Source: Octopus sinensis
Taxonomy: Eukaryota
Direction of reading: 5' to 3'
DNA: 64,000 nucleotides
Assembly: GCF_006345805.1 (NCBI RefSeq)
Contig: NC_043005.1
Location: 67,456,001-67,520,000 of the forward strand
The translations under genes and the position numbers were made by a program. The notes under the pieces were generated by a model. That model saw nothing but the letters and a program-made list of their open reading frames with translations. It searched no databases and was not told the DNA's origin. This document shows positions 1,704 to 60,740 of the stretch, in pieces. The stretch's first letter is position 1. Every line of letters starts with the position of its first letter.

Positions 1704-2935
1704 TTGTTTATATACATATGTATATATACAAAGAGAGAGAGAGATGTATATAATACTAGTATCTAGTTATGATCATGATATCAAGATTTCAAGGTGGTAA
1801 CCATATCCGAAAATATTACATGGCTTTTTAGAAGGCTCTTGTAACGTACAGAAGCTGAAAATTACAATAATTGAATGTAGGAATAACTTAAACATTTCTC
1901 CTTCCAACATAGGATCAAAAATAGGTGCCCCAGCATGGCCACAGCTCATGAGCTGAAACTGGAAAAATCAAAATCAATACCCAAAGCAGAACCAATTGAT
2001 TGGGTGGTAATATAGTAATTGTAATTAATATGTGGTTAAGAAATCTTTGTTTCATTCCAACTGGTAGCACCTTGGCCAGATGTATTTTACTTTGTCTTAG
2101 AACTGACCAATGACTCAGTAGTGAAATTAGCGTAGGAAGAAACTATGCGTAGAGAATTAGATATGCGTGTGTGCGTGTGTATGCGTGTGTGTTTGTGTGT
2201 GTGTTTGCGTATGTGTTGCTGTGCGTGCGCATGTGTGCCTATGTGTCTGCATGTGTAAGTGCACGCTTGCGTGTATCTGTATGGGTAAGCACCAGTAAAA
2301 GTATGCATTAGTTTCAGCCTGTTTGCTTTTGTCGCCTAGATTTACATCAACAACTGTCAAAATAAAACAAGAGTTGTTCATGCATCGTTAGATTATATAA
2401 CTTTTCGGATGAATAGGTTACAGACTGAAATAAATATTCAATCCGTATGAACAAATGATAGACGAATGAAAAAATAATGATGCATATTCCTAATGATGCA
2501 TAATCCTAATGACGCATATACAGAAAATTCCAAAAGCAAAGGAAGGGACCCATGCAACAGAAATCGATACGAGAGGACCAGTCCAGACGTATACTGCAGT
2601 ACTGGACATTCTAAAAAGATATCCACGTTCAGGTGGATATTAAGATTGCATTTTGGTACTATTCCTGCTTCCGTCAAAAATAATTATTTTTGAACTTTGA
2701 TGTCTGTTTCTAAAATACCTTGGAAGGAGTGACTTCAACTTTAACGTTGAAAACTGTACTATATATAATTATGTATGTTTATATATATATATATAATGCA
2801 CAATATATGGATTAAAATAATCCTGTGGTATTCACAGAAAAGCTCCTTTGGTGGACCAGTTTTTTTAACTGGTGAAATAGATATATTTATCTCATACGGC
2901 CTGATTCTCTCCATCTCTCCAGCTATCTATCTCTG

Positions 2936-3002
<67 letters not shown>

Positions 3003-4295
3003 ATGTTATATATATATATATATATGAAAAATGCATTAGATACTACAAAACGTACTCGTAAGACAGACACAGAAGACGCAAAAATGAGTATTAGTATTTT
3101 TTATTGTTAACTGAAGTTTCTCGCCGCCTTAGAAGTAAATAATGCCAGATGAGTCGACCGACCTAGATTCGATCAGAGACACTCTAACCAAATTTGGGTC
3201 GGTTGAGTCATTCTGCACTATGTACTTATTTTTGAGTACCTATATACTCCTGTTGAAAACGGATTTTTTTTCTTGCATGACGCAGCACTTCTGTGCATAA
3301 ATAAAAATCACGTCTGAAAAATTGTAGTTAACCACAATCAATCTGTTCTTATTATGCATTCTTCACCTGTCTGGAAATCTTCAATTCGTTTGGATTTAGA
3401 GTCTATAGATGGTTGTGAAACAGATGCAGTGAATGTAACCATGTGCCACTTTGATCACCCGTTGTGCATTCAGTCCAACACGTGAATGTATGCATAACTC
3501 CAGGAACAAGTTCATATTTACTTTAATGAGAACGTAGTTGTCGTTATACATTGTGTGTATGCAATCGCACCCACCCTAACTTGGTGCTTTTACTATTTAA
3601 ATACCTGGTTCTCACAAATCTTTGATATATGTGTGTGCGTGTGTGTGCATGTGTGTGCGTGTGTGTGTGTGTGTGTGTACGTATGGAAAACGAACCGCCG
3701 CCAACTATTGTGCCTATATGTCTGTGCACACCTTTCAATGCCATATATACAATGAAGTCAGTAAACCTGACGGAAGCCTCAAAAGACATTTTCAGATCCA
3801 CAAAAATCAGAATTTAACTGCAAGCTCTTGGTGGCCCAAATCAGATATGCAAATTATGTGGATGTCTTTTCAATACGTTGTCTGGTTTTAAAAGCCACAT
3901 CAGATGCCATGATGGATCTAAGGTGTAGGTACAAGACCTCTGCATATGGAGTAGACAACCACCATATATATATGTGTGAGTGTGTATCTGTGAGTGTATT
4001 TATATGTATATATCTATGTATGTACGTATATATATAGAACGTTTATATATTTGTTGTGCAAGATTTTTTTTTTATGTGAAGTCGTGTGTTGAAACAGATA
4101 TTGTAATATTTCGGCATGGTCATTTTGCCAGTTTAGTCAATAAAAACACACGCACTATATATTTGGTGTTATTTTGCTTCGGAAATTAGATTAAGATTAA
4201 TGTAAAAAATAAATAACACTGAAGCAAAATAACACCAAATATATAGTGCATGTATTTTTATTGGCTAAACTGGCAAAATGACCATTCCGAAATAT

Positions 4296-4326
<31 letters not shown>

Positions 4327-4738
4327 GGCGCAGGAGTGGCTGTGTGGTAAGTAGCTTGCTAACCAACCACATGGTTCCGGGTTCAGTCCTACTGCGTGGC
4401 ATCTTGGGCAAGTGTCTTCTGCTATAGCCCCGGGCCGACCAATGCCTTGTGAGTGGATTTGGTTGACGGAAACTGAAAGAAGCCCGTCGTATATATGTAT
4501 ATATATGTATATGTATGCGTGTGTTTGTGTGTCTGTGTTTGTCCCCCTAGCATTGCTTGACAACCGATGTTGGTGTGTTTACATCCCCGTCACTTAGCGG
4601 TTCGGCAAAAGAGACCGATAGAATAAGTACTGGGCTTACAAAGAATAAGTCTCGGGGTCGATTTGCTCGACTAAAGGCGGTGCTCAAGCATGGCCGCAGT
4701 CAAATGACTGAAACAAGTAAAAGAGAAAGAGAAAGAGT
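4327..4738 (+). mobile_element. tRNA-derived SINE, family A (full length)
   Basis: GGCGCAGGAGTGGCTGTGTGGTAAG head with A-box and GGTTCAGTCC B-box, internal (TA/TG) repeat, tail ...CATGGCCGCAGTCAAATGACTGAAACAAGTAAAAGAG. Near-identical copies at 31232 and 43746. Confidence 0.85.
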
Positions 4739-4794
4739 ATATATATATATTTACACATACATACACACAAAAACACACAGAAAAATAGAGAGAG

Positions 4795-4873
4795 AGAATG
4801 AGCGTCCAATAACACGATACTTATTCCACATCCTCGCGCTGTTGCGTTTTCTCTTTGTTCATATTTGGATTAA

Positions 4874-4877
<4 letters not shown>
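4795..4877 (+). mobile_element. PLE-type 3' tail fragment
   Basis: GAGCGTC.AATAA...TCCTCGCG.TG...TTTGGATTAACT followed by (AT)n. Homologous to the opposite-strand copy at 4953-5105, which carries an HHR. Confidence 0.5.
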
Positions 4878-4915
<38 letters not shown>

Positions 4916-4952
4916 ATATATATATATAGATATATATATATATATATATATA

Positions 4953-5105
4953 TAGTTAATCCAAACAAGAAAACACAGAAAAAAACAGCAACGCGAGGAC
5001 AATTAAAGTATTATTTGACGCTCAGGAGGTTTAACGTTTCGAGCGGAGCTCTTCGTCGGAAACAAGGAGAAGGAAAGATCACAAGAAGGGAAGACAGAGG
5101 AAAAA
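4953..5105 (-). mobile_element. PLE-type 3' end with hammerhead motif
   Basis: HHR-like core at 5029-5063 followed by the same tail as 4795-4877, ending in (AT)n. Confidence 0.6.
5029..5063 (-). ncRNA. Minimal type I hammerhead ribozyme variant (U4C)
   Basis: Minus strand GUUU-CCGACGA-A-GAGC-UCC-GCUC-GAAAC-GUU^AAAC: 4-bp stem I, 4-bp stem II, loop-less palindromic AACGUU stem III (dimer type). Confidence 0.55.
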
Positions 5106-5138
5106 AATATTTTTATTAAAAAAAAAAATATATATATA

Positions 5139-5178
<40 letters not shown>

Positions 5179-5182
<4 letters not shown>

Positions 5183-5360
5183 TTTATAGAAGGAGCTTCT
5201 ACAGGACTAGAACTGTTCATTCAAAAGAAATCATCAGGATTTCTTATGATGAAACAGTTCTAGTCCTGTAGAAGCTCCTTCTATAAAATAATTAATTTAC
5301 TCTGCTATGTATTGAGTACCTTATTTACTGTGGTTAACCCCGTCTCAACCTGGGACCTAC
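5179..5360. mobile_element. Fold-back PLE 3' end (inverted arms centred in a hammerhead)
   Basis: TTTTATAGAAGGAGCTTCTACAGGACTAGAACTGTT(T)CAT is the reverse complement of ATGAAACAGTTCTAGTCCTGTAGAAGCTCCTTCTATAAAA. The loop contains TCATCAG (CUGAUGA on minus). The right arm continues ~70 nt further to (AT)n. Confidence 0.7.
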
Positions 5361-5409
5361 ATATATATATATATAAATATATTACATGCATATATTATAT
5401 ATATATATT

Positions 5410-5442
<33 letters not shown>

Positions 5443-6444
5443 ATTATAATATATGGAGAGAGTGAGAGAGAGAGAAAGAGATAGTACTGCACAAATAGAA
5501 GCCGAAACATAGTGATGGAAGTAGTATATCTGTGCTTGACAAAGAAAATATGAAATAATTGATAAGCTGTAAACGAAAAGAAATAATAGTCTATTTCGAA
5601 AGATTTTAAAATATTTTATCTACCTTTTGTGTAATGAAACCTGTCAGTCTTTGCCTCTCCTCCTGAGTTACGTTGTTCTTCAACAGAGACGAATTATCAA
5701 AAATTTGATGTAAATCTACAAGATTGTTTTCTCTTTCTGAAATGAAAATCGAAGTATTAATTTCTATACGTCAGATGAATATCGTTACGATTATATTATT
5801 CAATGTATAAATGTACTGAAAAGTTAATAGAAGACCAGATTCAGGTTCAGATAAACCTGAAGTGTGTATATTGAAAATTGATTTGCTAGTGTAACCGGTG
5901 ATCTGATGAGCAAGCTTTCTTTATTAGGATTAATATGTGAAAATGCAACTGTACTGTATAATGCAGAGCTTACATATAAATAAGAGCCGACGCGTAATTT
6001 CTTCCATCCATATATTAATATTACACGAAGAAAGTTACGAAACACTCGAACACTCGTCATTAAATAAATATGTATTCACCTCTCATATCTCCAGATTCTC
6101 TGTTTATATGTAAATGTGTGTGTGTATTTGTACACACACACACACACAAACACACACACTCACACACATGTGGAACTCCTTTTTACAGGAGATTAATAAA
6201 AGGATTATACAAAGAGAATATAATACGACGATGGAGGATAACCGCACACAAACATTAATTTGCTCAGTTCATATTCAAAGAACATTCTTTTTAATTATTA
6301 CAAAGGTGAATGAGGCTCGGCAACAGCCGTATGTGGCCGCATCATTCGAGCAGAATACGATTAATAAGCCCCTGGATTTCAACCCCACCACCATATATAC
6401 GCTTTGTCGTTGGTAATACTCCACCTCTTCCAAACCTGTGAATT

Positions 6445-44255: not shown

Positions 44256-44339
44256 GACATATATATATAGACATATTTACATATATAGACATATAATATA
44301 TATACATATATATACATAAATATATACATATATATATTA

Positions 44340-44430
44340 TATTAAATTACAGATAAAACCACTATTAGGCATATCAAACAATGAAAAACATAAGCCAATA
44401 CATAAAATTAATTTAATTTATATTATCTTA
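44340..44430 (-). mobile_element. PLE 3' end fragment related to the 8-kb element
   Basis: ATTACAGATAAAACCACTATTAGGCATATCAAAC..AATACATAAAATT is homologous to 51973-52037 and abuts (AT)n at the same position. Confidence 0.6.
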
Positions 44431-44685
44431 AATATATACCAAAAGTATTAAAAGTTTACTAAAAGATATATATATATACATACATATATAACATATATAT
44501 ATACATATATATATATACATACATATATATATATATATACATATATATACATACATACATATATACATATATATACATACATATATATATACATATATAT
44601 ATCTACATACATATATATACATATATATGTACATATATATACATATATATGTACATATATGTACATATATATATATATATATATG

Positions 44686-49185: not shown

Positions 49186-51789
49186 GTGTGTGTGTGTTGA
49201 AAAATACAGATGAGAAAATAATTTTATGTCTGTGCATGTGTGTAATTGTTTTTGGCTACGTTAATAGGTAACTCAGAATATACGCAGGCTTTAAAACCAT
49301 TCAAAGGGTTCTGAGAATTGTTGTAGAAGGCGAAGATATTTTCTGCAGAGCGACGAATTGTTCCGAATGCTTACAACAGGTTAGACTATGTAAAACGTTC
49401 GTCACAAAAGAGCAGGAATGTTTCTTCGGATAAATTTCTATAATAACAACTCTGATGACTCAGTCAGAAACGTAACGAACAACGCTCTGAAAGCTCTGCA
49501 AAACGTAATCTGTAACGGTAACTACTTTGTATACATGTCCTCAATACGTATCTCTCAGAAGAACAGTTCACATAGCAGTCAATACCTGTATGAAGCATAG
49601 ACCAATACTGACGAGGATAATACTGACGAATAAAATTTTGTAAGCCTCTTTTACTTTTGTGAGGCCTTATTGGCATAATATTGGTGTTGCAGTACTCGGC
49701 AATTTGATTTGAATACTGACGACATATGATAACTTATTTGCAATGATCCACTGTTTAAATCCTCATCCATAATGATGGTAATGAGATTGTAATGAGGAGG
49801 AAGGTTAGGTGGAAGCGGAGAATATCAAATCTACAGACTAGTCTTAATCATATATACTTGAATATACTTGAATATACTTGAGTGAATTTCTCTCAATTCT
49901 CAGCAAGTACTTCCACGCTATACAGAAGTGTATACTTGCTGGAAGAACAGAATAAGCCTGCTTCATCGAAAACATATAATGACTGAGCAATTTATCGTCA
50001 AATATGTTTAGCAAGTCTCGACTTAAGATGATTGACATGCCTCGACTCAAAACGTTATCTAAGTCGTGGCTCCTGGAGATGAATAATTTCGAGTGATTTA
50101 ATTTGATTTTTTTAAATTATGCCTTGCTGAAAACAATGGCAAAATAAAATAAATATTATGTTCGTTATTAAGTGTCAAGTTTTTCTCTCTTATATATAGC
50201 TAAGGTATCCATTCGTAATTCTATTTCTGCACAAGACTTTTTTTTCAAATAATATGAATAAATTTTGTAGATAATTATCGATGACACATTCTCATGCTTA
50301 CCGTCAGATTCATCTATAACTCTTAGCACGACTAGCTTTAGTGCAATACTAAAGCCACATTAATACATTTATCACTTACACTACTCAATATGATGGTCTG
50401 TAGAAACCATATGATTCACGTTCTAAATATTATCAAGAGACCCCCAGCCGCTCCTTCTTTGAGCAGTCATTTAGCTACTTGTTTTGCACTTTCCTCGAAG
50501 AGTTGGTTAACTAGCTTTCCAGTTCTTATGCGACTGTCCCGAAAGTATTTTTATTCTTCTTTCTGTATATACCATTTTGTCTTGATCTTTCTTTCTTCTT
50601 TTTTTATTATCTTTTAGTATATTTCTTTCTTTTTAACGCATTGAAATCGTGACAATGTTCGATATAATTTCTTTCATCATTACGTTGAAATTTTCTTCAT
50701 TCACCCACCTTCCTATGGTCTCTTATTCTCCTACGTTTTAAGAAATATTACACTATTGTGTTAGATATGATGTCATACGTTGCTGCTGCAGTTGTCGTCT
50801 AGCATCAGGACGATTCTAATCAAACAGACCTATACCAAAGGCATGCAGCCATTCCGCCGATTAGATTTAATAAATTGTGGTTTTGGTTGTAGTCATCACT
50901 CTTGATGTTAATGGCTGATGTTGGTTTCGTCATCGTTGTCGTCGATGTTATTGTTGCTGTTGTTTAGCCTACGGTTAAATCTAATGGATTATATCTATTG
51001 TGAAATGCGCTCCAGCTATGATGATTCATGTTTATGAACTCATCTGACCTCAACCAGAACTGGTATTATAGTTGTAGCACCATGTTACTTTGCTATTGTT
51101 CATTTACTCCGGTTCTAACCTTTTATTTTCTTTACGTGTTTTGTTACTGGTATCAGTCCTTAGAGAAGACTCAATTTAATTGCTTGACCTTCTAAAATAA
51201 CTTCAAAATATCCCTCATAACCCACCCTACCGTGCAAAGGAATGACGTTCGATTGCAAACTACGAGATACACTAGACTGGAAAATAAAAATCGACTGTCA
51301 GCAATGGAACGTCTTTAACAATAGGTTTCATTCACTGGACTTGATTCTGCGACTATACATCAACAAAAATAATAAAATTGTATTGTTTGCTATTATAGAT
51401 AGTAGGTGCATATAAAGAGAAAATGAAAGGTAAATCTATAATTAACAACGAAGTGAGGATGACCTTAAACTAAACACTACTTCCATTCAATGCATGCAGA
51501 AAAGCGAAGGATGAAACAATACGACAATAAATAAGATACTAAATCATATCAGAGAGAGAGAGAGAGAGAGCGATATAGAAAAAGCGAAACAAACAGTAAA
51601 AAAGTACTTCAATACGAATCTGTACCTGTTATTGTTCGTATAATGAATATGTATAACTACGTAAGTTTTAAATGATTTTTTATTTCCTTATCTCTGATCC
51701 CATTATAACGAATCCTTCGTCTTTATCCAATGAGCGAATGCTTCTTTAGCCTTTCAATATTCATACACACACGGATGCATATGTGTGTG

Positions 51790-51829
<40 letters not shown>

Positions 51830-51887
51830 ATTATATTATATATATATACACTTGTATGCACACACACACACGAACCCCCCACACCAG

Positions 51888-51945
<58 letters not shown>

Positions 51946-52058
51946 TATATATATATATATATATAAAATATTATTAGAGACAAAACCACTATTTTGCAAA
52001 ACAAACAAGGAAAGACTTAATCAATACATAAAATTTTAATAAATAGTCAAAAAAACCG

Positions 52059-52101
52059 CTACTACAATTGTTTCTTGTCTTGATCGACAATCTTCAGGTG
52101 G
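52059..52101 (-). ncRNA. Type I hammerhead motif, left arm
   Basis: Mirror of 59989-60031. Confidence 0.6.
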
Positions 52102-55100
52102 ACTTCCAATCTAAAATATCAATATTTTAAAATATAAAAATAATAATTTTAAAATAATTAAAGTATGAATGAAAAAATGTAAATATATAATCCATATATA
52201 ACCTATATATAATCCATATATAATCAATATATAAACAATATATAAACTAAAATAAACACTATCAACAATTAAATATAAAATATAAAATATAAAATATAAA
52301 ATATAAAAAAAAACAAAAAAATAATAATAATATAATAATAAACTATATATACACCCATACACATATACCTAATTATATATAACCATATCTAACTACATAC
52401 ACTAAATCACACACCTATATATATATCCCTATACGTACACATAAAAACGTCTAGGCAACTATAAATAAATAAAATAGTTAAATACTTCAACACAATACTT
52501 ATTCATACTCCCACACACACACACATACAACCCACATTCACGCTCTAGAAAACGGACATCACTTAAAATTATGAACGGAGAAATGGAATAAATGGAATTA
52601 AAAATTATATTCACTTGGTAAAACTAACACTACTTAAAAATTATGAATGAAACAATGCAATAAAACAACAGACATCGCAAATAGACACAAATTACTACGA
52701 ATTCCTTAACAAACCTACCATGATAACCAAAACTCATAAAAACATATAATGATAAAATCTCCCTTACTAAACTCTATAACATACCTATATAGCAATCCCC
52801 CTAACCTAAACATTCACACACAAATACACACACGTAAACCACACACCCACGACATATACAAATACCCACACCACTTACACATACCTAACATACATATAAA
52901 CCTCAACATATACTCCAAAAACCCACTCAACCCCACACAGACAAATAAACACAAAAATTATGAATGGATTCTTTTATAAAACTACCATGATAAGCTAAAA
53001 CTCACAAAACATAAATGATAAAACCTCCCTTTACTAAACACTATAACATACTTATATAGGAACCCCTTTAACCTATACATTCACACACAAATACACACAC
53101 ATAAACCACACACCCATAACAAATACAAACACCCACCCCACTCACACACACCACAAGTACATATACGCCTCAACATATACACCAAACAAAATTACTTTAC
53201 CAAGGAACTTAACATATGTATAAAAAGTATAACCGCTCTGGAAACGAACATCTTTTAAAATAATGAATGGAGAAATGGAATAAATGGAATTAAAAATAAT
53301 ATTCACGTGGCAAAACGAACACCACTCAAAAATTATGAATGAAACAATGTAATAAAACAACCAACATCGAAAATAGACAAATTACCACGAATTCCCTAAA
53401 AAAAACCATGATAAACCAAAACTCTTAAAAACATATAACGATAAAATCTCCCTTTGCTAAACTCTATAACAAACCTATATAGCAATCCCCCTAACCTAAA
53501 CATTCACACACAAAAAACACACACGTAAACCACAGACCCACGACTTATACACATACCTATACTAACTTATAAACCTCAATATACACCAAAAACCCACTTC
53601 CTCCCCACACAGACAAATTAACACATACATCCCAAAACCTAAATAACAACCCATATACACATTCACACAAAAACACACACACACGCAAAACACACACACA
53701 CACAACAGATACATATACTCCCTCACATATACGCATATACATCCTTACTAAACTCGATATATACAACAATATTTACACACCCACACTCATACAGATAAAT
53801 AAATTATACAACTAAAAACTCACACACAATCTCATATACATAAACACTCCAATAAAAAACAACATTAAATACATCGTAATTAACCAGAATATCAAAAATA
53901 ACAATATGACATAAGGAGAAATAAAATACATACTTACAAGTCAGTTTCAAATTATGAAGTGAAATTAAATGCTTAGCCGTTAAAAAATCAAACCAAAATT
54001 ACGTTACCATAGAAATATAACTTATGTAAAAAAAGAATACGCGCCATGGAAAGTAAACGTCATTTAAAATATGAATGGAGAAATAGAATAAATGGAACTA
54101 AAAACTATATCCACGTGGCAAACCAACACTACTTAAAAAAAATTTATTATGAATGGATTCTTTAATAAAACTACCATAATAAATTATTATATACAATTAT
54201 AAGCTTTAGCTCATCTTAGCAGCTCTAACAAACAACTTGCAGTAACCCAAATCTATTCTCGATGCCTGCCTTACTACTACACTATTCCATTCCCAATTCC
54301 AAGCAACGCTAGCCCACCACCCGGTTACAATTCCCAACTCCACCCATTCATTCACAATTTCAACGACGTTCACCTCCACAGCGCTACATATAAGCCTCAA
54401 CATATACACCGGAGATTCAATTTCACATCCGTGCGGATGGGTGAGATTATACATTGAGTGTAGTGATGGGGCTCCCATTACTATACACATTTGTACCTGT
54501 GTGGTAGTCTCCATGTGTATATTCACGCACGGGTATAAATGCAGGGGGTACACGCGCACGGCATGTACGTGTACCCCCTCACATGTACATATGCATGCTA
54601 GTTGGGCTCGATATGTGCAACAATGTAATCGCGCCCGCATACATGCATATGGGCGAGTTGCACAATCAAAATACGCACACGTGTGTGTGTGCGTTCCCTG
54701 GTTGTGCAATTCACCCATCTGGGTGTGAGTGGGTGTAAACGTATTGCTGTGGATGTCGAGCTTGATACGTATGTATATGAGTGTGTATTGGGGGTTGTAC
54801 GTATTTATTGTGTGCATGTGCTTCACGCACGTGCGTCCATGTATGGATGAATATATTGGGATTGCTATGTGGGTGTAAATTGGGTATGGAGGGGGGAGTT
54901 TTGTCATTGTATGGGTGTAGGTTTCATTTGTGATGGTGGTTTGTTGGTGATTTTTATATGTTCTGTATATTGGGTTAGTTATGTATTATTCTAGTGTGTA
55001 TAATTGTATACATATGATTGGTGTGAGTGGGATTACGCCCATTTTTAGGGATGTATGTGTTTATTCGTCCGTATGGGGCGGGAGTGGCCGTTTGGTGTAT

Positions 55101-55599
55101 ATGTTGAGGCTCACATGCAATTCCAGGTACGCGCGAATGAAGTGGGCACTTATATTTGTTATGGGTGTGTATACTTTATTATAACAGACAATACCCAAAT
55201 AAAATCTGTCAATTCAACATACCAAATAAAAAACAAAAAACAAAGGGATCGTAAACATTCACACATACATACAAAACTCAATAAAAACACCACTAAATAA
55301 CACCCATCAACATATAAATATATCCTCCAAAATACATATAACAAATGCATAATAAAAATACATAATAAAATAAAATAAAATAAAAAATATATAAATAAAG
55401 AAAATAAAAAATCTAATATAATTATTAAAGTTTTAACATACCATAAACTGTTATATTAATATACATTAAAAATGAACTAATTAAAACAAAGAAATATCAA
55501 TAAAGACTAACTATAATTAAAGCCTAGACTACATACCAAAAAATATTATCTAAACTAATTTAAACTAAACTAAAGTAACCTAATAGGGAACTATTATTG

Positions 55600-56170
55600 C
55601 TATTTATCATGAAACTTATTATATAGGTAAAGTAACTTATGTCTGCATTTTATTTTGCGCTCTTCACCAGTATTAAGTAAATTATCATACTTATAAAATA
55701 AAATTTCTTTAAACTCATTAGAGCATAAATAACAACAATTAGCTCCTATAGTATATGATTTAGTTTTACAAATTATTTCCAAATTAAACTATAATTAATA
55801 TTTAGTGATTTAAGACTCCAAATGTACTTACTAAGTCCAGTTGAGTTGATTACGTTTTTATTTTTAAAAGAATTCATATGTTGTGCGATTCTTAGTTTTA
55901 TTTTTGAGGAAGTAGAACCTATATAAACCGCTTTTGGGTAATTATTATTCTTAAAGTTATTATCATGTAATGTAACTATACATTTATACACTACATCGTT
56001 AATATCACAATTATTATTTAATATACAATTAGATTTATCTCTACATGTACAATTAATATAAGTCTTATCATTATTAATATTATTATCAAATAATTTCTTT
56101 TTATAAAAATTATTCAGTTTATATTTATTAAATGAAGAAATAATGTTACCAACATTATTAGTGGTAGTAC
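55600..56170 (-). pseudogene. PLE GIY-YIG endonuclease domain, 5'-truncated, one frameshift near 55780
   Basis: TTTNNVGNIISSFNKYKL...CTCRDKSNCILNNNCDINDVVYKC...VYIGST...R..QHMNSF...STGLSKYIWSLK..NYSLIW / IICKTKSY...CYLC.NE....LLN....KCRH: Cys-rich linker plus GIY-YIG of PLEs. Confidence 0.9.
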
Positions 56171-56483
56171 TTCCTCAAAAATAAAACTAAGAATCGCACA
56201 ACATATGAATTCTTTTAAAAATAAAAACTTAATCAACTCAACTGGACTTAGTAAGTACATTTAGAGTCTTAAATCACTAAATATTAATTATAGTTTAATT
56301 TGGGAAATAATTTGTAAAACTAAATCATATACTATAGGAGCTAATTGTTGTTATTTATGCTCTAATGAGTTTAAAGAAATTTTATTTTATAAGTATGATA
56401 ATTTACTTAATACTGGTGAAGAGCGCAAAATGAAATGCAGACATAAGTTACTTTACCTATATAATAAGTTTCATGATAAATAG
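56168..56483 (+). pseudogene. PLE GIY-YIG C-terminal part, in-frame TAG at 56262-56264
   Basis: TSSKIKLRIAQHMNSFKNKNLINSTGLSKYI*SLK..LIWEIICKTKSYTIGANCCYLCSNEFKEI..LLNTGEERKMKCRHK; stop at 56481-56483. Confidence 0.9.
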
Positions 56484-59400
56484 CAATAATAGTTCCCTAT
56501 TAGGTTACTTTAGTTTAGTTTAAATTAGTTTAGATAATATTTTTTGGTATGTAGTCTAGGCTTTAATTATAGTTAGTCTTTATTGATATTTCTTTGTTTT
56601 AATTAGTTCATTTTTAATGTATATTAATATAACAGTTTATGGTATGTTAAAACTTTAATAATTTATATTAGATTTTTTATTTTCTTTATTTATATATTTT
56701 TTATTTTTATTTTATTTTATTATGTATTTTTATTATGCATTTGTTATATGTATTTTGGAGGATATATTTATATGTTGATGGGTGTTATTTAGTGGTGTTT
56801 TTATTGAGTTTTGTATGTATGTGTGAATGTTTACGATCCCTTTGTTTTTTGTTTTTTATTTGGTATGTTGAATTGACAGATTTTATTTGGGTATTGTCTG
56901 TTATAATAAAGTATGCACACCCATAACAAATATAAGTGCCCACTTCATTCGCGCGTACCTGGAATTGCATGTGAGCCTCAACATATACACCAAACGGCCA
57001 CTCCCGCCCCATACGGACGAATAAACACATACATCCCTAAAAATGGGCGTAATCCCACTCACACCAATCATATGTATACAATTATACACACTAGAATAAT
57101 ACATAACTAACCCAAATATACAGAACATATTAAAAATCACCAACAAACCACCATCACAAATGAAACCTACACCCATACAATGACAAAACTCCCCCCTCCA
57201 TACCCAATTTACACCCACATAGCAATCCCAATATATTCATCCATACATGGACGCACGTGCGTGAAGCACATGCACACAATAAATACGTACAACCCCCAAT
57301 ACGCACTCATATACATACGTATCAAGCTCGACATCCACAGCAATACGTTTACACCCACTCACACCCAGATGGGTGAATTGCACAACCAGGGAACGCACAC
57401 ACACACGTGTGCGTATTTTGATTGTGCAACTCGCCCATATGCATGTATGCGGGCGCGATTACATTGTTGCACATATCGAGCCCAACTAGCATGCATATGT
57501 ACATGTGAGGGGGTACACGTACATGCCGTGCGCGTGTACCCCCTGCATTTATACCCGTGCGTGAATATACACATGGAGACTACCACACAGGTACAAATGT
57601 GTATAGTAATGGGAGCCCCATCACTACACTCAATGTATAATCTCACCCATCCGCACGGATGTGAAATTGAATCTCCGGTGTATATGTTGAGGCTTATATG
57701 TAGCGCTGTGGAGGTGAACGTCGTTGAAATTGTGAATGAATGGGTGGAGTTGGGAATTGTAACCGGGTGGTGGGCTAGCGTTGCTTGGAATTGGGAATGG
57801 AATAGTGTAGTAGTAAGGCAGGCATCGAGAATAGATTTGGGTTACTGCAAGTTGTTTGTTAGAGCTGCTAAGATGAGCTAAAGCTCATAATTGTATATAA
57901 TAATTTATTATGGTAGTTTTATTAAAGAATCCATTCATAATAATTTTTTTTAAGTAGTGTTGGTTTGCCACGTGGATATAGTTTTTAGTTCCATTTATTC
58001 TATTTCTCCATTCATAATTTTAAATGACGTTTACTTTCCATGGCGCGTATTCTTTTTTTACATAAGTTATATTTCTATGGTAACGTAATTTTGGTTTGAT
58101 TTTTTAACGGCTAAGCATTTAATTTCACTTCATAATTTGAAACTGACTTGTAAGTATGTATTTTATTTCTCCTTATGTCATATTGTTATTTTTGATATTC
58201 TGGTTAATTACGATGTATTTAATGTTGTTTTTTATTGGAGTGTTTATGTATATGAGATTGTGTGTGAGTTTTTAGTTGTATAATTTATTTATCTGTATGA
58301 GTGTGGGTGTGTAAATATTGTTGTATATATCGAGTTTAGTAAGGATGTATATGCGTATATGTGAGGGAGTATATGTATCTGTTGTGTGTGTGTGTGTTTT
58401 GCGTGTGTGTGTGTTTGTGTGTGAATGTGTATATGGGTTTGTTATTTAGGTTTTGGGATGTATGTGTTAATTTGTCTGTGTGGGGAGGGAGTGGGTTTTT
58501 GGTGTATATTGAGGTTTATAAGTTAGTATAGGTATGTGTATAAGTCGTGGGTCTGTGGTTTACGTGTGTGTTTTTTGTGTGTGAATGTTTAGGTTAGGGG
58601 GATTGCTATATAGGTTTGTTATAGAGTTTAGCAAAGGGAGATTTTATCGTTATATGTTTTTAAGAGTTTTGGTTTATCATGGTTTTTTTTAGGGAATTCG
58701 TGGTAATTTGTCTATTTTCGATGTTGGTTGTTTTATTACATTGTTTCATTCATAATTTTTGAGTGGTGTTCGTTTTGCCACGTGAATATTATTTTTAATT
58801 CCATTTATTCCATTTCTCCATTCATTATTTTAAAAGATGTTCGTTTCCAGAGCGGTTATACTTTTTATACATATGTTAAGTTCCTTGGTAAAGTAATTTT
58901 GTTTGGTGTATATGTTGAGGCGTATATGTACTTGTGGGTGTGTGTGAGTGGGGTGGGTGTTTGTATTTGTTATGGGTGTGTGGTTTATGTGTGTGTATTT
59001 GTGTGTGAATGTATAGGTTAAAGGGGTTCCTATATAAGTATGTTATAGTGTTTAGTAAAGGGAGGTTTTATCATTTATGTTTTGTGAGTTTTAGCTTATC
59101 ATGGTAGTTTTATAAAAGAATCCATTCATAATTTTTGTGTTTATTTGTCTGTGTGGGGTTGAGTGGGTTTTTGGGGTATATGTTGAGGTTTATATGTATG
59201 TATAGGTATGTGTAAGTGGTGTGGGTATTTGTATATGTCGTGGGTGTGTGGTTTACGTGTGTGTATTTGTGTGTGAATGTTTAGGTTAGGGGGATTGCTA
59301 TATAGGTATGTTATAGAGTTTAGTAAAGGGAGATTTTATCATTATATGTTTTTATGAGTTTTGGTTTATCATGGTAGGTTTGTTAAGGAATTCGTAGTAA

Positions 59401-59988
59401 TTTGTGTCTATTTGCGATGTCTGTTGTTTTATTGCATTGTTTCATTCATAATTTTTAAGTAGTGTTAGTTTTACCAAGTGAATATAATTTTTAATTCCAT
59501 TTATTCCATTTCTCCGTTCATAATTTTAAGTGATGTCCGTTTTCTAGAGCGTGAATGTGGGTTGTATGTGTGTGTGTGTGGGAGTATGAATAAGTATTGT
59601 GTTGAAGTATTTAGCTATTTTATTTATTATAGTTGCCTAGACGTTTTTATGTGTACGTATAGGGATATATATATAGGTGTGTGATTTAGTGTATGTAGTT
59701 AGATATGGTTATATATAATTAGGTATATGTGTATGGGTGTATATATAGTTTATTATTATATTATTATTATTTTTTTGTTTTTTTTTATATTTTATATTTT
59801 ATATTTTATATTTTATATTTAATTGTTGATAGGTTTATTTTAGTTTATATATTGTTTATATATTGATTATATATGGATTATATATAGGTTATATATGGAT
59901 TATATATTTACATTTTTTCATTCATACTTTAATTATTTTAAAATTATTATTTTTATATTTTAAAATATTGATATTTTAGATTGGAAGT

Positions 59989-60031
59989 CCACCTGAAGAT
60001 TGTCGATCAAGACAAGAAACAATTGTAGTAG
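59989..60031 (+). ncRNA. Type I hammerhead motif, right arm
   Basis: CUGAAGA 59993-59999, perfect stem II UUGUC/GACAA, GAAAC 60016-60020, palindromic AAUU loop, GUA 60025-60027. Stem I is weak (CCAC/GUAG with a C.A mismatch). Confidence 0.6.
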
Positions 60032-60244
60032 CGGTTTTTTTGACTATTTATTAAAATTTTATGTATTGATTAAGTCTTTCCTTGTTTGTTTTGCAAAATA
60101 GTGGTTTTGTCTCTAATAATATTTTATAATATTTTACTATAAAATTGGATTTAATCCTAAATCTGATTTTTTCCCTGTAAATTTGGATTTATTCCCTAAT
60201 ATTTATTATATATATATATATATATATATACATACATACATATA

Positions 60245-60680
60245 CAAGGGTTGGACAAAATAATGGAAACACCTTAAAATTTCAAACAAATTTGTTTTAA
60301 TACGTGGTAGGACCGCCTTTGGCAGTAATTACACCTTAAATTCAGGGAGGTATGGACTCATACAAACTTTGAATTGTTTCCCAAGGAATTTTTGTCTATT
60401 CTTCAGCTAAAACAGACTTCAGTTCTAATAGTGATGATGGTGGAGGATATCGACTGCTTACTTGTATTTCGAAAATGCACCATAAATGTTCAATAATATT
60501 GAGATCTGAGCACTGTGGTGGCCAGATAAGATGTTCAGCTTCACTAGAATGTTCCTCGTACCATTCAGTAACAACTTTAGCTATTTGCAGAGGGGCATTA
60601 TCATCCTGAAAGTTTGCGTTTCCCTCTTCCGGAAACTGTTCCGCAACCATAGGATGAAGTTGATCCGATAGTATTCAGCT
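60245..60680 (-). mobile_element. Tc1-like element 3' part with one TIR
   Basis: NFQDDNAP..AKVVTEWY..HLIWPPQCSDLNIIEHLW (DD34E region); TA|CAAGGGTTGGACAAAATAATGGAAACACC terminus. Confidence 0.85.
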
Positions 60681-60692
60681 AACTAGATATAA

Positions 60693-60740
<48 letters not shown>

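What the first reader, a model, noticed from the sequence alone, without database searches (positions are those of the whole stretch)
51962..60205. 8.2-kb near-perfect palindrome built from a Penelope-like element with a ~3.7-kb 3' region
Seen: two ~3.95-kb arms differing by scattered substitutions and homopolymer indels, a 253-bp spacer, a GIY-YIG fragment at the centre, HHRs ~130-210 nt from the outer ends, unique flanks and (AT)n on both sides. After the endonuclease stop (56483) there are about 3.7 kb of non-coding sequence, far longer than the few hundred bp I associate with PLE pLTRs. Inference: a young insertion of a PLE lineage with a giant structured 3' UTR, duplicated at insertion. 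A read-through transcript would give ~4 kb of dsRNA, a strong ADAR/RNAi substrate in a cephalopod, and the DNA could extrude a cruciform.
Basis: partly seen in the sequence, partly recalled or inferred. Interest (0 to 1): 0.9.

Follow-up and report, generated by a model that had tools for sequence, protein, structure and literature searches.

The report
Head-to-head Penelope-like retrotransposon insertion
The 8.2-kb palindrome is real, but it is the usual double, head-to-head insertion footprint of a young, roughly 1,000-copy Penelope-like retrotransposon (Hydra clade); its one unusual feature is a 3.7-kb non-coding, strongly self-pairing 3' region that belongs to the element.

Summary
Arms 51962-55914 and 56168-60128 differ by 11 substitutions and about 13 one-base indels. 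The 253-bp "spacer" is simply more of the left copy.

The structure is two 5'-truncated copies of one ~6.24-kb Penelope-like element (PLE). They lie head to head with their 3' ends outward, inside a (TA)n tract.

The ORF carries the Hydra-clade motifs described in the literature. Both arms hold a hammerhead ribozyme core on the sense strand.

The 3.7-kb region after the endonuclease stop is part of the element. It follows the endonuclease contiguously at about 98% identity in 16 of 20 other loci.

Half of the sampled insertions have the same head-to-head partner. In all 11 such structures, one outer end is "short" and the other carries a 77-nt tail, as here.

The arms share 12 private substitutions, so they come from one source and most likely one event. 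Reverse transcription primed on both strands of the target, as published for a PLE in vitro, explains the structure.

An assembly fold-back is unlikely. The arms stop exactly at the element termini and the two flanks differ.

The long, self-pairing 3' region is unusual for this clade, where elements are generally under 3 kb. Its function is unknown. The dsRNA, ADAR and cruciform ideas remain untested. Interest is moderate to low.

The parts
51790..51961 (.). Left part of the interrupted (TA)n target microsatellite
   Evidence: Read directly from the sequence. Every outer end of this family in 20 other loci abuts (TA)n.
51962..56167 (-). Copy A: a 5'-truncated PLE copy on the minus strand, reference positions 1991 to about 6176. 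It ends at the short 3' terminus.
   Evidence: Matches a full-length reference copy at 97.6%. The 5' breakpoint at 56167 was mapped base by base.
51962..55599 (-). 3' non-coding region of copy A (left arm)
   Evidence: The stop codon of the remnant ORF is at 55600-55602.
52059..52101 (-). Hammerhead ribozyme motif of copy A. The core is at 52071-52097.
   Evidence: Pattern match. Helices were read from the sequence and from the family majority sequence.
55600..56167 (-). C-terminal endonuclease-coding remnant of copy A, containing CxCx5C, GIY, YIG, R..H, CxxC, E, N and CxH. It has one frameshift near 55779, probably a homopolymer assembly error.
   Evidence: ORFs 55773-56174 and 55600-55788; alignment with homologues; indel context.
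55915..56167 (-).
   Evidence: Reference positions 1991-2243 are present only in the minus-strand copy.
56168..60205 (+). Copy B: a 5'-truncated PLE copy on the plus strand, reference positions 2244-6243. It ends at the long 3' terminus.
   Evidence: The junction 56167|56168 has no filler and no microhomology.
56168..56483 (+). Endonuclease-coding remnant of copy B, with a private nonsense change (TGG to TAG) at 56262-56264
   Evidence: 56263 is A here and G in 16 of 16 other copies.
56484..60128 (+). 3' non-coding region of copy B, 3645 nt. It contains diverged direct modules (58463-58854 resembles 59136-59551; 58902-59147 resembles 59170-59414; 57911-58096 resembles 58725-58904) and an inverted module at 56916-57041.
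   Evidence: Self-comparison. Predicted long-range pairing of 56.9-57.9 kb with 57.9-59.3 kb. z = -11.5. The 256-aa ORF at 57111-57881 is broken in 16 of 16 other copies and has no Pfam hit.
59989..60031 (+). Hammerhead ribozyme motif of copy B. The core is at 59993-60019 and the predicted cleavage is after 60027. Both arms carry G>A at 60030, which weakens helix I.
60129..60205 (+). 77-nt tail, present at the right end only. In tandem copies it runs straight into the 5' UTR and start codon of the next unit.
60206..60244 (.). Right part of the (TA)n target microsatellite

Best explanation
The palindrome is most likely the product of a single integration of a Hydra-clade Penelope-like retrotransposon into a (TA)n microsatellite.

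The element unit is about 6.24 kb. It has a 44-nt 5' UTR, one ORF of roughly 840 codons encoding a telomerase-like RT followed by a C-terminal GIY-YIG nuclease, and then 3.7 kb of non-coding 3' sequence. That 3' sequence ends with a type-I hammerhead ribozyme, a further 100 nt, and an optional 77-nt tail.

Inferred mechanism:
1. The element's nuclease cut both strands of the (TA)n tract.
2. Each free 3'-OH primed reverse transcription of element RNA from the same source.
3. One cDNA began at the short start site (equivalent to 60128) and the other at the long start site (equivalent to 60205).
4. Both cDNAs stopped early inside the nuclease-coding region, at reference positions 1991 and 2244.
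5. The two cDNA 3' ends were joined directly, each serving as template for the other's second strand.

The result is two 5'-truncated copies, head to head, with their 3' ends outward.

Shown here: the anatomy, the breakpoints, the shared private variants, and the recurrence of the same architecture and end asymmetry at other loci. Inferred from published in vitro work on another PLE: priming on both strands.

The 3.7-kb 3' region is an integral part of the template RNA that grew by internal direct and inverted duplications. I consider it most likely a non-coding passenger or regulatory region rather than a new functional module (about 0.6 against 0.4).
For: Family identity:
- Intact and near-intact ORFs at other loci end in the same nuclease.
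- RT motifs FIQIDIDNYYSSI and GGLYRDDLLL are present, together with DKT and R/KWK motifs. The linker is CxCx5C (CTCRDKSNC). There is no CCHH, and CxxC and CxH flank the conserved E and N. This is the motif set published for the Hydra clade (PMC8557442).
- Relatives reach the Pfam GIY-YIG cut-off (P0139 scores 22.7 against 22.6).
- A confident AF2 model (pLDDT 85.5) of a 44%-identical relative has telomerase RTs as its best PDB folds (E = 3e-9).
- The hammerhead core sits on the sense strand of each arm. The family majority sequence forms helix I of 4 bp, helix II of 5 bp, and helix III of 2 bp with a palindromic AAUU loop. That is the metazoan type-I architecture described in PMC4209133.

The 3' region is linked to the element:
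- The whole arm is contiguous at 97-99% in 16 of 20 loci.
- Candidate counts are similar along the element: RT 908, EN 576, mid-3' 1047, 3' end 1177.

The insertion architecture recurs:
- Ten of the 19 other distinct loci carry a head-to-head partner. Their junctions abut with 0-3 nt of overlap, or hold 38-83 nt of element-derived filler.
- In all 11 inverted structures scored (ten other inverted structures and the window), one outer end is short and the other long. The chance expectation is about 0.5 per pair.
- All ends abut (TA)n.

One source: the arms share 12 substitutions absent from 16 other copies.

Published mechanism: a purified PLE protein cleaves and extends both strands, and starts reverse transcription at two internal sites that delimit the tail (PMC11167929). 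The inverted 5'-truncated partner and the tail at one end are described as typical of PLEs (PMC8557442).
Against: - No reads, RNA data or second genome were available, so the single-event origin and priming on both strands are inferred for this family, not shown.
- Pfam does not recognise either domain in the octopus-type ORF itself.
- Rfam does not recognise the hammerhead.
- The fold match of the nuclease domain to a GIY-YIG enzyme (T4 EndoII) is the top hit but not significant (E = 0.27).
- No reference Hydra-clade sequences were at hand for a phylogeny.
- The element is twice the size described for the clade.
- In vitro, the two RT start sites showed no strand preference (PMC11167929). The strict one-short, one-long rule seen here is therefore not yet explained.
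Confidence: 0.8

Rival explanations
1. A single 5'-truncated copy inserted first. A host process such as fold-back replication, template switching or hairpin-capped break repair later duplicated it in inverted orientation.
For: The arms share 12 private substitutions, which this scenario also predicts. The junction has no filler.
Against: The duplication would have to stop exactly at the element's 3' terminus. It would also have to convert a long end into a short one, or the reverse. The same short/long asymmetry and termini that end exactly at the element boundary recur in ten other inverted structures at unrelated sites. That points to the integration machinery, not to random host repair.
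Confidence: 0.07
2. Two independent insertions of the same family went into the same (TA)n tract in opposite orientations.
For: The family targets (TA)n and has about 1,000 copies. A second, tiny PLE 3' fragment sits in another (TA)n tract of the window.
Against: The arms share 12 substitutions plus shared indels seen in none of 16 other copies. No target sequence lies between the two 5' ends. The complementary short and long ends fit a coupled event.
Confidence: 0.06
3. It is an assembly artefact: a fold-back chimeric long read, or a mis-join, created one arm.
For: The assembly is error-prone in homopolymers. Palindromes are hard to assemble. No read data were available.
Against: A fold-back read would retrace the flank, but the left and right flanks are different sequences. 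The arms have different 5' breakpoints 253 nt apart and different 3' termini. They differ at 11 substitutions, split about evenly between the arms. The same architecture occurs at ten other loci. The locus lies inside a 110-Mb scaffold.
Confidence: 0.04
4. The 3.7-kb 3' region is a functional RNA module rather than a passenger. Candidate roles are a scaffold for RNP assembly or dimerisation, an internal promoter acting in the pseudo-LTR, or a decoy for dsRNA-sensing pathways.
For: It is retained full-length in 16 of 20 copies. It folds far better than shuffles, z = -11.5, with nested long-range stems of up to 24 bp. A relative manages with about 560 nt between ORFs, so the expansion is lineage-specific. 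The family is nevertheless very successful.
Against: All copies are 97-100% identical, so retention says nothing about selection. The pairing comes largely from CA-rich against GU-rich low-complexity modules and their duplicates. Copies with internal deletions of the region exist and sit at ordinary termini (L027/L032 and L023). Whether those deletions arose before or after insertion is unknown.
Confidence: 0.3

Closest known systems
Hydra clade of Penelope-like elements (Craig et al. 2021, PMC8557442)
   Same: Single ORF with a C-terminal GIY-YIG nuclease. DKT and RWK-type motifs. CxCx5C linker. No CCHH. CxxC and CxH around the conserved E and N. Hammerhead motif. Insertion into (TA)n. Occurrence in aquatic invertebrates, including molluscs.
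   Different: The described elements are "generally short (<3 kb)". This unit is 6.24 kb because of a 3.7-kb non-coding 3' region. An N/K-rich low-complexity insertion splits the region between RT and nuclease. Phylogenetic placement against reference Hydra sequences was not done.
Canonical PLE insertion architecture: pseudo-LTRs, an inverted 5'-truncated partner, and a tail of 30-40 bp at one end (Penelope, Poseidon, Neptune, Naiad)
   Same: Direct tandem partial copies and head-to-head inverted partial copies occur at about half of the loci. An optional terminal extension is present at only one end. 5' truncation is frequent.
   Different: The tail is 77 nt rather than 30-40 nt. Both partners here are long (about 4 kb), which gives an unusually large and clean palindrome with no full-length copy.
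Poseidon PAc of Anolis carolinensis in vitro (Frangieh et al. 2024, PMC11167929)
   Same: It supplies the mechanism invoked here: the protein cleaves and extends both target strands, and reverse transcription starts at two adjacent internal sites whose interval corresponds to the genomic tail.
   Different: It belongs to a different PLE clade. In vitro there was no strand bias in the choice of start site, whereas here the two ends of all 11 inverted structures scored use different sites.
Twin priming of human L1 (own knowledge: Ostertag and Kazazian 2001)
   Same: A second 3'-OH at the target primes a second cDNA on the same element RNA, which creates inverted segments in one event.
   Different: L1 twin priming gives an inversion with a deletion or duplication inside a single copy, not two outward-facing 3' ends. 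The L1 nuclease is of the APE type and nicks the strands sequentially.
Metazoan type-I hammerhead ribozymes of PLEs (Cervera and de la Pena 2014, PMC4209133)
   Same: Conserved core CUGAnGA...GAAA, a short helix I (4 bp), and a 2-bp helix III capped by a palindromic 4-nt loop (ACAAUUGU can pair between two copies). Located in the terminal repeat region.
   Different: The 10.1-11.1 pair is U-A instead of the usual G-C. The motif is not detected by the Rfam models. Self-cleavage is untested. The two copies in this window carry a helix I mismatch.

Membership tests
Penelope-like elements (PLE) | Reverse transcriptase of the telomerase-related type | tested here: met
   RT motifs A, B and C are present in the octopus ORF and conserved in homologues. 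An AF2 model of the 44%-identical relative P0001 (pLDDT 85.5) has TERTs as its top PDB folds (6zdq E = 3.4e-9, 3du5, 7qxb). Pfam RVT_1 does not hit. The fold test was run on a relative, not on the octopus protein itself.
Penelope-like elements (PLE) | GIY-YIG endonuclease fused to the RT in one ORF | tested here: met
   GIY (VVYK), YIG (VYIGST), R..H, E and N motifs are at the C-terminus of the same ORF. Family relatives P0139 and P0111 hit Pfam GIY-YIG; P0139 scores 22.7 bits against a 22.6 cut-off. The AF2 nuclease-domain model has the expected beta-beta-alpha-alpha-beta-alpha order, and its best PDB hits are T4 EndoII, though only at E = 0.27. Pfam does not hit the octopus fragment directly.
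Penelope-like elements (PLE) | Pseudo-LTRs: partial tandem copies and/or an inverted 5'-truncated copy next to the insertion | tested here: met
   Direct upstream partial copies occur in L015, L017, L018, L021, L024, L026, L028 and L031. Inverted partners occur in L013, L015, L016, L017, L018, L019, L023, L027/32, L030, L031 and the window.
Penelope-like elements (PLE) | Optional terminal tail at only one end of an insertion | tested here: met
   There are two discrete termini 77 nt apart. One of each is found in all 11 inverted structures scored.
Penelope-like elements (PLE) | Hammerhead ribozyme motif in the terminal repeat | tested here: inconclusive
   The core descriptor used in the literature (cuganga N7-17 gaaa) matches on the sense strand of both arms. 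Helices I to III can be drawn on the family majority sequence. Against this, there is no Rfam hit, no covariation is available among 98%-identical copies, and cleavage was not assayed.
Hydra clade of PLEs | C-terminal nuclease lacking the CCHH motif, with a CxCx5C linker, and CxxC and CxH around the conserved E and N | tested here: met
   The linker is CTCRDKSNC. There is a single Cys between GIY and YIG. CYLC ... E ... N ... CRH follow. The criteria are from PMC8557442, section 11.
Hydra clade of PLEs | DKG modified to DKT; an RWK motif at the N-terminus | tested here: met
   QSDKTRNLYK and ISRIKWKAFYY occur in the N-terminal ORF of L029, aligned with ADKT and RWRAF in the homologues.
Hydra clade of PLEs | Insertion into (TA)n | tested here: met
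   All outer ends in the 20 loci and in the window abut (TA)n.
Hydra clade of PLEs | Short element (generally <3 kb) | tested here: not met
   The unit is 6243 nt in a reference copy. The paper words this as a tendency, not as a criterion.
Hydra clade of PLEs | RT groups with reference Hydra families in a phylogeny | not testable with these tools
   No Repbase or supplementary reference sequences were available.

The most novel reading that the evidence does not exclude
The lineage-specific 3.7-kb self-pairing 3' region, together with the routine creation of multi-kilobase head-to-head copies, could make this family a systematic generator of long hairpin RNA and dsRNA loci in an octopus-type genome. 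Either the 3' region or the palindromes would then have a function. Possible roles are RNP scaffolding, a promoter within the pseudo-LTR, or substrates for self-targeting small RNAs or ADAR that regulate the family.
Probability: 0.12. Interest if true: 0.6.

Novelty: new member of a known kind. Interest (0 to 1): 0.33.

Why it matters
The palindrome itself is explained by known PLE biology, so it should not be read as a new kind of structure.

The family is still useful. It has about 1,000 very young copies (the best-matching RT-region copies are 99-100% identical), about half of them with head-to-head partners. Breakpoints, filler and the strict one-short, one-long end rule can be read directly from the sequence. 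That is a natural record of the poorly understood PLE integration reaction.

It also shows that a Hydra-clade PLE can carry a 3' region larger than its ORF. This matters for repeat annotation, because such regions are easily called "unknown repeat". It also matters for assembly quality control of palindromic loci.

Tried and rejected
- Rfam, at gathering and E<=10 thresholds, on the window ends and on a copy with the consensus hammerhead: no hammerhead hit.
- Pfam on the nuclease fragment, the 641-aa ORF, the N-terminal ORF and close homologues: nothing.
- A profile of the family against PDB sequences: nothing meaningful.
- Monomer MFE fold of the hammerhead region: not hammerhead-like, z = +0.6. 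This is expected for a ribozyme with a 2-bp helix III, so it is uninformative.
- Second ORF in the 3' region. The 256-259-aa frames at 57111-57881 and 54206-54985 are broken in 16 of 16 other copies and have no Pfam hit. I rejected them as chance frames in stop-poor CA-rich sequence.
- ADAR footprint. There is no family-wide excess of sense-strand A>G. The right arm's 4 A>G among 5 private changes show no ADAR neighbour preference.
- The idea that the 3' region grew by capturing its own pseudo-LTRs. This is not supported, because the terminal hammerhead and tail segment is not repeated internally.
- Search for an empty-site haplotig. The left flank is single-copy.
- Counting intact ORFs genome-wide. 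Within the sampled loci, one-base indels are as common as substitutions, so ORF integrity cannot be judged from this assembly.
- The other four hammerhead-core matches in the window (26166, 40967, 49452, 60902) have no helix II and look like chance.
Full report

Yes. Inverted-repeat detection finds blocks that are 96-100% complementary and tile 51962-55919 against 56163-60128. A gapped alignment of the left arm against the reverse complement of the right arm places the arms at 51962-55914 and 56168-60128. Outside the flanking (TA)n it shows 10 substitutions and 14 one-base indels in about 3,950 nt; the later multiple alignment counts 11 substitutions and about 13 one-base indels. The gap between the arms is 253 bp (55915-56167).

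Base composition mirrors across the centre, with strong opposite GC and AT skews.

The right arm is followed by 77 bp (60129-60205) with no counterpart on the left, and then by (TA)n. The left arm abuts (TA)n directly.

The left flank (50900-51750) is single-copy in the 2.72-Gb genome. The right flank is a Tc1/mariner (DDE_3) remnant. The two flanks are not reverse complements of each other.

**2. What the arms are**

The centre carries an ORF remnant on the minus strand (55773-56174, continuing after a frameshift to 55600). The same C-terminal piece lies on the plus strand (56265-56483).

The 538-bp plus-strand piece has at least 576 candidate matches in the window's own genome. The 40 that were scored are 97-100% identical.

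Other loci show that this piece is the C-terminus of a long ORF. One copy has an uninterrupted 641-codon frame. Full-length copies start at an ATG 44 nt into the unit.

The protein has these features:
- RT motifs FIQIDIDNYYSSI, IPMGAPDSAQATDLVG and GGLYRDDLLL.
- An N/K-rich low-complexity linker.
- A nuclease domain with CTCRDKSNC (CxCx5C), VVYK, VYIGST, R..H, CYLC, E, N and CRH.
- Near the N-terminus, IKWKAFYY and SDKTRNLY.

Pfam recognises neither domain. The database homologues are 33-44% identical in BLASTP local alignments (P0001 44%) and 480-880 aa long, with the same layout. A family profile finds 32,890 cluster representatives, and two of them reach or approach the Pfam GIY-YIG threshold.

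An AF2 model of the octopus nuclease domain has the GIY-YIG order of secondary-structure elements. Its best PDB hits are T4 EndoII, a GIY-YIG enzyme, but only at E = 0.27.

A confident model of relative P0001 (pLDDT 85.5) matches telomerase RTs best (E = 3e-9 to 1e-7). Group II intron, retron, DRT9 and R2 RTs follow.

A telomerase-like RT fused to a GIY-YIG nuclease defines a Penelope-like element. The specific motif set is the published description of the Hydra clade (PMC8557442 section 11): DKT, RWK-type, CxCx5C, no CCHH, CxxC and CxH around E and N, insertion into (TA)n, and a hammerhead.

**3. The hammerhead**

The descriptor used in the literature (CUGAnGA, 7-17 nt, GAAA) matches at 59993-60019 (+) and 52071-52097 (-), which is the sense strand of each copy. 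There are six matches in the window against 1.39 expected. The other four lack a helix II.

In 29 of 31 family copies the sequence is CCAC-CUGAAGA-UUGUC-GAUCAA-GACAA-GAAA-C-AAUU-G-UA|GUGG. That gives helix I of 4 bp, helix II of 5 bp, and helix III of 2 bp capped by the palindromic loop AAUU. The stretch ACAAUUGU is an 8-nt palindrome. This fits the metazoan type-I hammerheads that are thought to act as dimers (PMC4209133).

Both arms of this locus carry the same G>A change at helix I position 1.3 (60030).

Rfam does not report the motif, and the monomer does not fold into it. I therefore treat the ribozyme as a motif-level identification. Activity is untested.

**4. Is the 3.7-kb region part of the element?**

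Yes. I fetched twenty 10-kb loci around other copies of the nuclease piece. In 16 of them the whole arm, from the equivalent of 56168 to 60132 or 60244, is one contiguous match at 97.5-98.9%. Mapping against a full-length reference copy gives the same picture. The exceptions carry internal deletions or truncations.

Candidate counts along the element are of one order: RT 908, EN 576, mid-3' 1047, 3' end 1177. The region is therefore not a separate, more abundant repeat.

The unit is 6,243 nt. A relative from a marine metagenome is caught as a tandem with only about 560 nt between one ORF's stop and the next ATG, a unit of about 3.2 kb. That is the size the literature gives for the clade. The octopus-type element therefore has a lineage-specific expansion.

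The region consists of T-rich, CA-rich and GU-rich low-complexity blocks. It contains several diverged direct copies (72-85%) of modules of roughly 100-420 bp, and one inverted copy. The terminal hammerhead segment is not among the repeated modules, so I dropped the idea that the region grew by swallowing its own pseudo-LTRs.

The RNA is predicted to fold far better than dinucleotide shuffles: -1028 against -866 +/- 14 kcal/mol, z = -11.5. The segment 56.9-57.9 kb pairs with 57.9-59.3 kb in stems of up to 24 bp.

The long open frames in the region are broken in all 16 other copies and have no Pfam match. They are not genes.

**5. How the palindrome arose**

Mapped on the reference copy, the left copy covers positions 1991 to about 6176 and the right copy covers 2244-6243. 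They meet at 56167|56168 with no filler and no microhomology. The "spacer" is thus the extra 253 nt of the left copy.

The arms share 12 substitutions and several indels that none of 16 other copies has. The 11 substitutions that separate them are split about evenly between the arms. Their divergence is 0.28%, against a family mean of 1.2%.

The architecture is the rule for this family. Ten of the 19 other distinct loci have a head-to-head partner. Their junctions abut with 0-3 nt of overlap, or contain 38-83 nt of element-derived filler. Eight have a direct upstream partial copy, a pseudo-LTR.

Every outer end lies in (TA)n and uses one of two discrete termini 77 nt apart. In all 11 inverted structures scored, including this one, one end is short and the other long. 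If the ends were chosen independently, that would have a probability of roughly 4e-4.

In tandem copies the long end runs straight into the 5' UTR and start codon of the next unit.

All of this matches published PLE biology:
- A tail is often present at one end only (PMC8557442).
- In vitro, a PLE protein cleaves and extends both target strands and starts reverse transcription at two internal sites that delimit the tail (PMC11167929).

I therefore read the locus as one integration with reverse transcription primed on both strands. Both cDNAs aborted in the nuclease-coding region and were joined to each other.

**6. Rivals**

An assembly fold-back is unlikely, for these reasons:
- The flanks differ.
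- The arms stop exactly at the element termini.
- The 5' breakpoints and the 3' termini differ between the arms.
- The same design recurs at other loci.

The assembly is, however, noisy in homopolymers. Eleven of the one-base differences are deletions in the left arm only. In the ORF, one-base indels equal or outnumber substitutions in most copies. The frameshift in the left copy, and the lack of intact ORFs in the sample, should therefore not be over-read.

A later host-mediated inverted duplication, or two independent insertions, are each possible but fit the end asymmetry and the shared variants poorly.

Gene conversion between the arms could make the insertion look younger than it is.

**7. 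What remains open**

The function, if any, of the 3' region is unknown. The copies are too similar for conservation to be informative.

The only proxy I could compute was negative: there is no family-wide excess of sense-strand A>G. The right arm's four A>G changes out of five private substitutions are a small-number oddity with no ADAR-like sequence context.

**8. Verdict**

The structure is a textbook-type complex insertion of a known retroelement class, here a new, large-bodied member of the Hydra clade. It is of moderate interest as material for studying the PLE integration mechanism, and because of the unusual 3' region.

Noticed in passing
window 60030 and 52060: Both arms carry the same G>A change in hammerhead helix I (position 1.3, giving a C.A mismatch). 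It is absent from 29 of 31 other copies. The template RNA therefore already had a weakened ribozyme.
   Followed up: partly
window 56432, 56915, 57303, 59175: Four of the right arm's five private substitutions are A>G on the sense strand, whereas the family-wide share of A>G is 8.5%. Their contexts show no ADAR-like neighbour preference. The numbers are too small to interpret.
   Followed up: partly
left arm 51962-55914, and ORF regions of L013-L032: One-base deletions in short homopolymers are as frequent as substitutions. Eleven lie in the left arm alone, and most ORF copies carry 1-12 frameshifts alongside 1-19 substitutions. This is typical of long-read assembly error, so the ORF integrity and activity of the family cannot be judged from this assembly.
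   Followed up: yes
window 60250-60700 (minus strand): A Tc1/mariner-type transposase remnant (Pfam DDE_3, E = 3.6e-7). Its end abuts the (TA)n tract that the PLE used as target.
   Followed up: partly
window 44335-44465 (minus strand): A fragment of about 130 bp, 80% identical to the last 78 nt of the PLE 3' end, embedded in (TA)n/(TATG)n. It is probably a heavily 5'-truncated copy of an older related family.
   Followed up: partly
L027/L032 (G000:C4:140.96-140.98 Mb) and L026/L028 (G000:C2:171.69-171.71 Mb): These are larger head-to-head structures of the same family. One has a copy complete to its 5' end. The other has two full-length copies, each with an upstream pseudo-LTR, about 10 kb apart, which suggests a palindromic structure of more than 17 kb. 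In L027 the full-length inverted copy ends inside the reverse complement of the tail. That hints that the template RNA starts within the tail and so has a terminal redundancy.
   Followed up: partly
L030 locus positions 2851-2888 (sense orientation): The 38-nt filler at a head-to-head junction is a patch copied from another part of the ORF (about reference positions 795-832). This is a sign of serial template switching during integration.
   Followed up: no
window 26166(+), 40967(-), 49452(+), 60902(-): Four further matches to the minimal hammerhead core descriptor. None has a convincing helix II, so they are probably chance matches (1.39 expected per window).
   Followed up: partly
L034 positions 644-668: In a marine-metagenome relative, a hammerhead-core match overlaps the ORF start codon. 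This recalls the Anolis Poseidon element, where the ORF begins in stem II. No clear helix II was seen.
   Followed up: no
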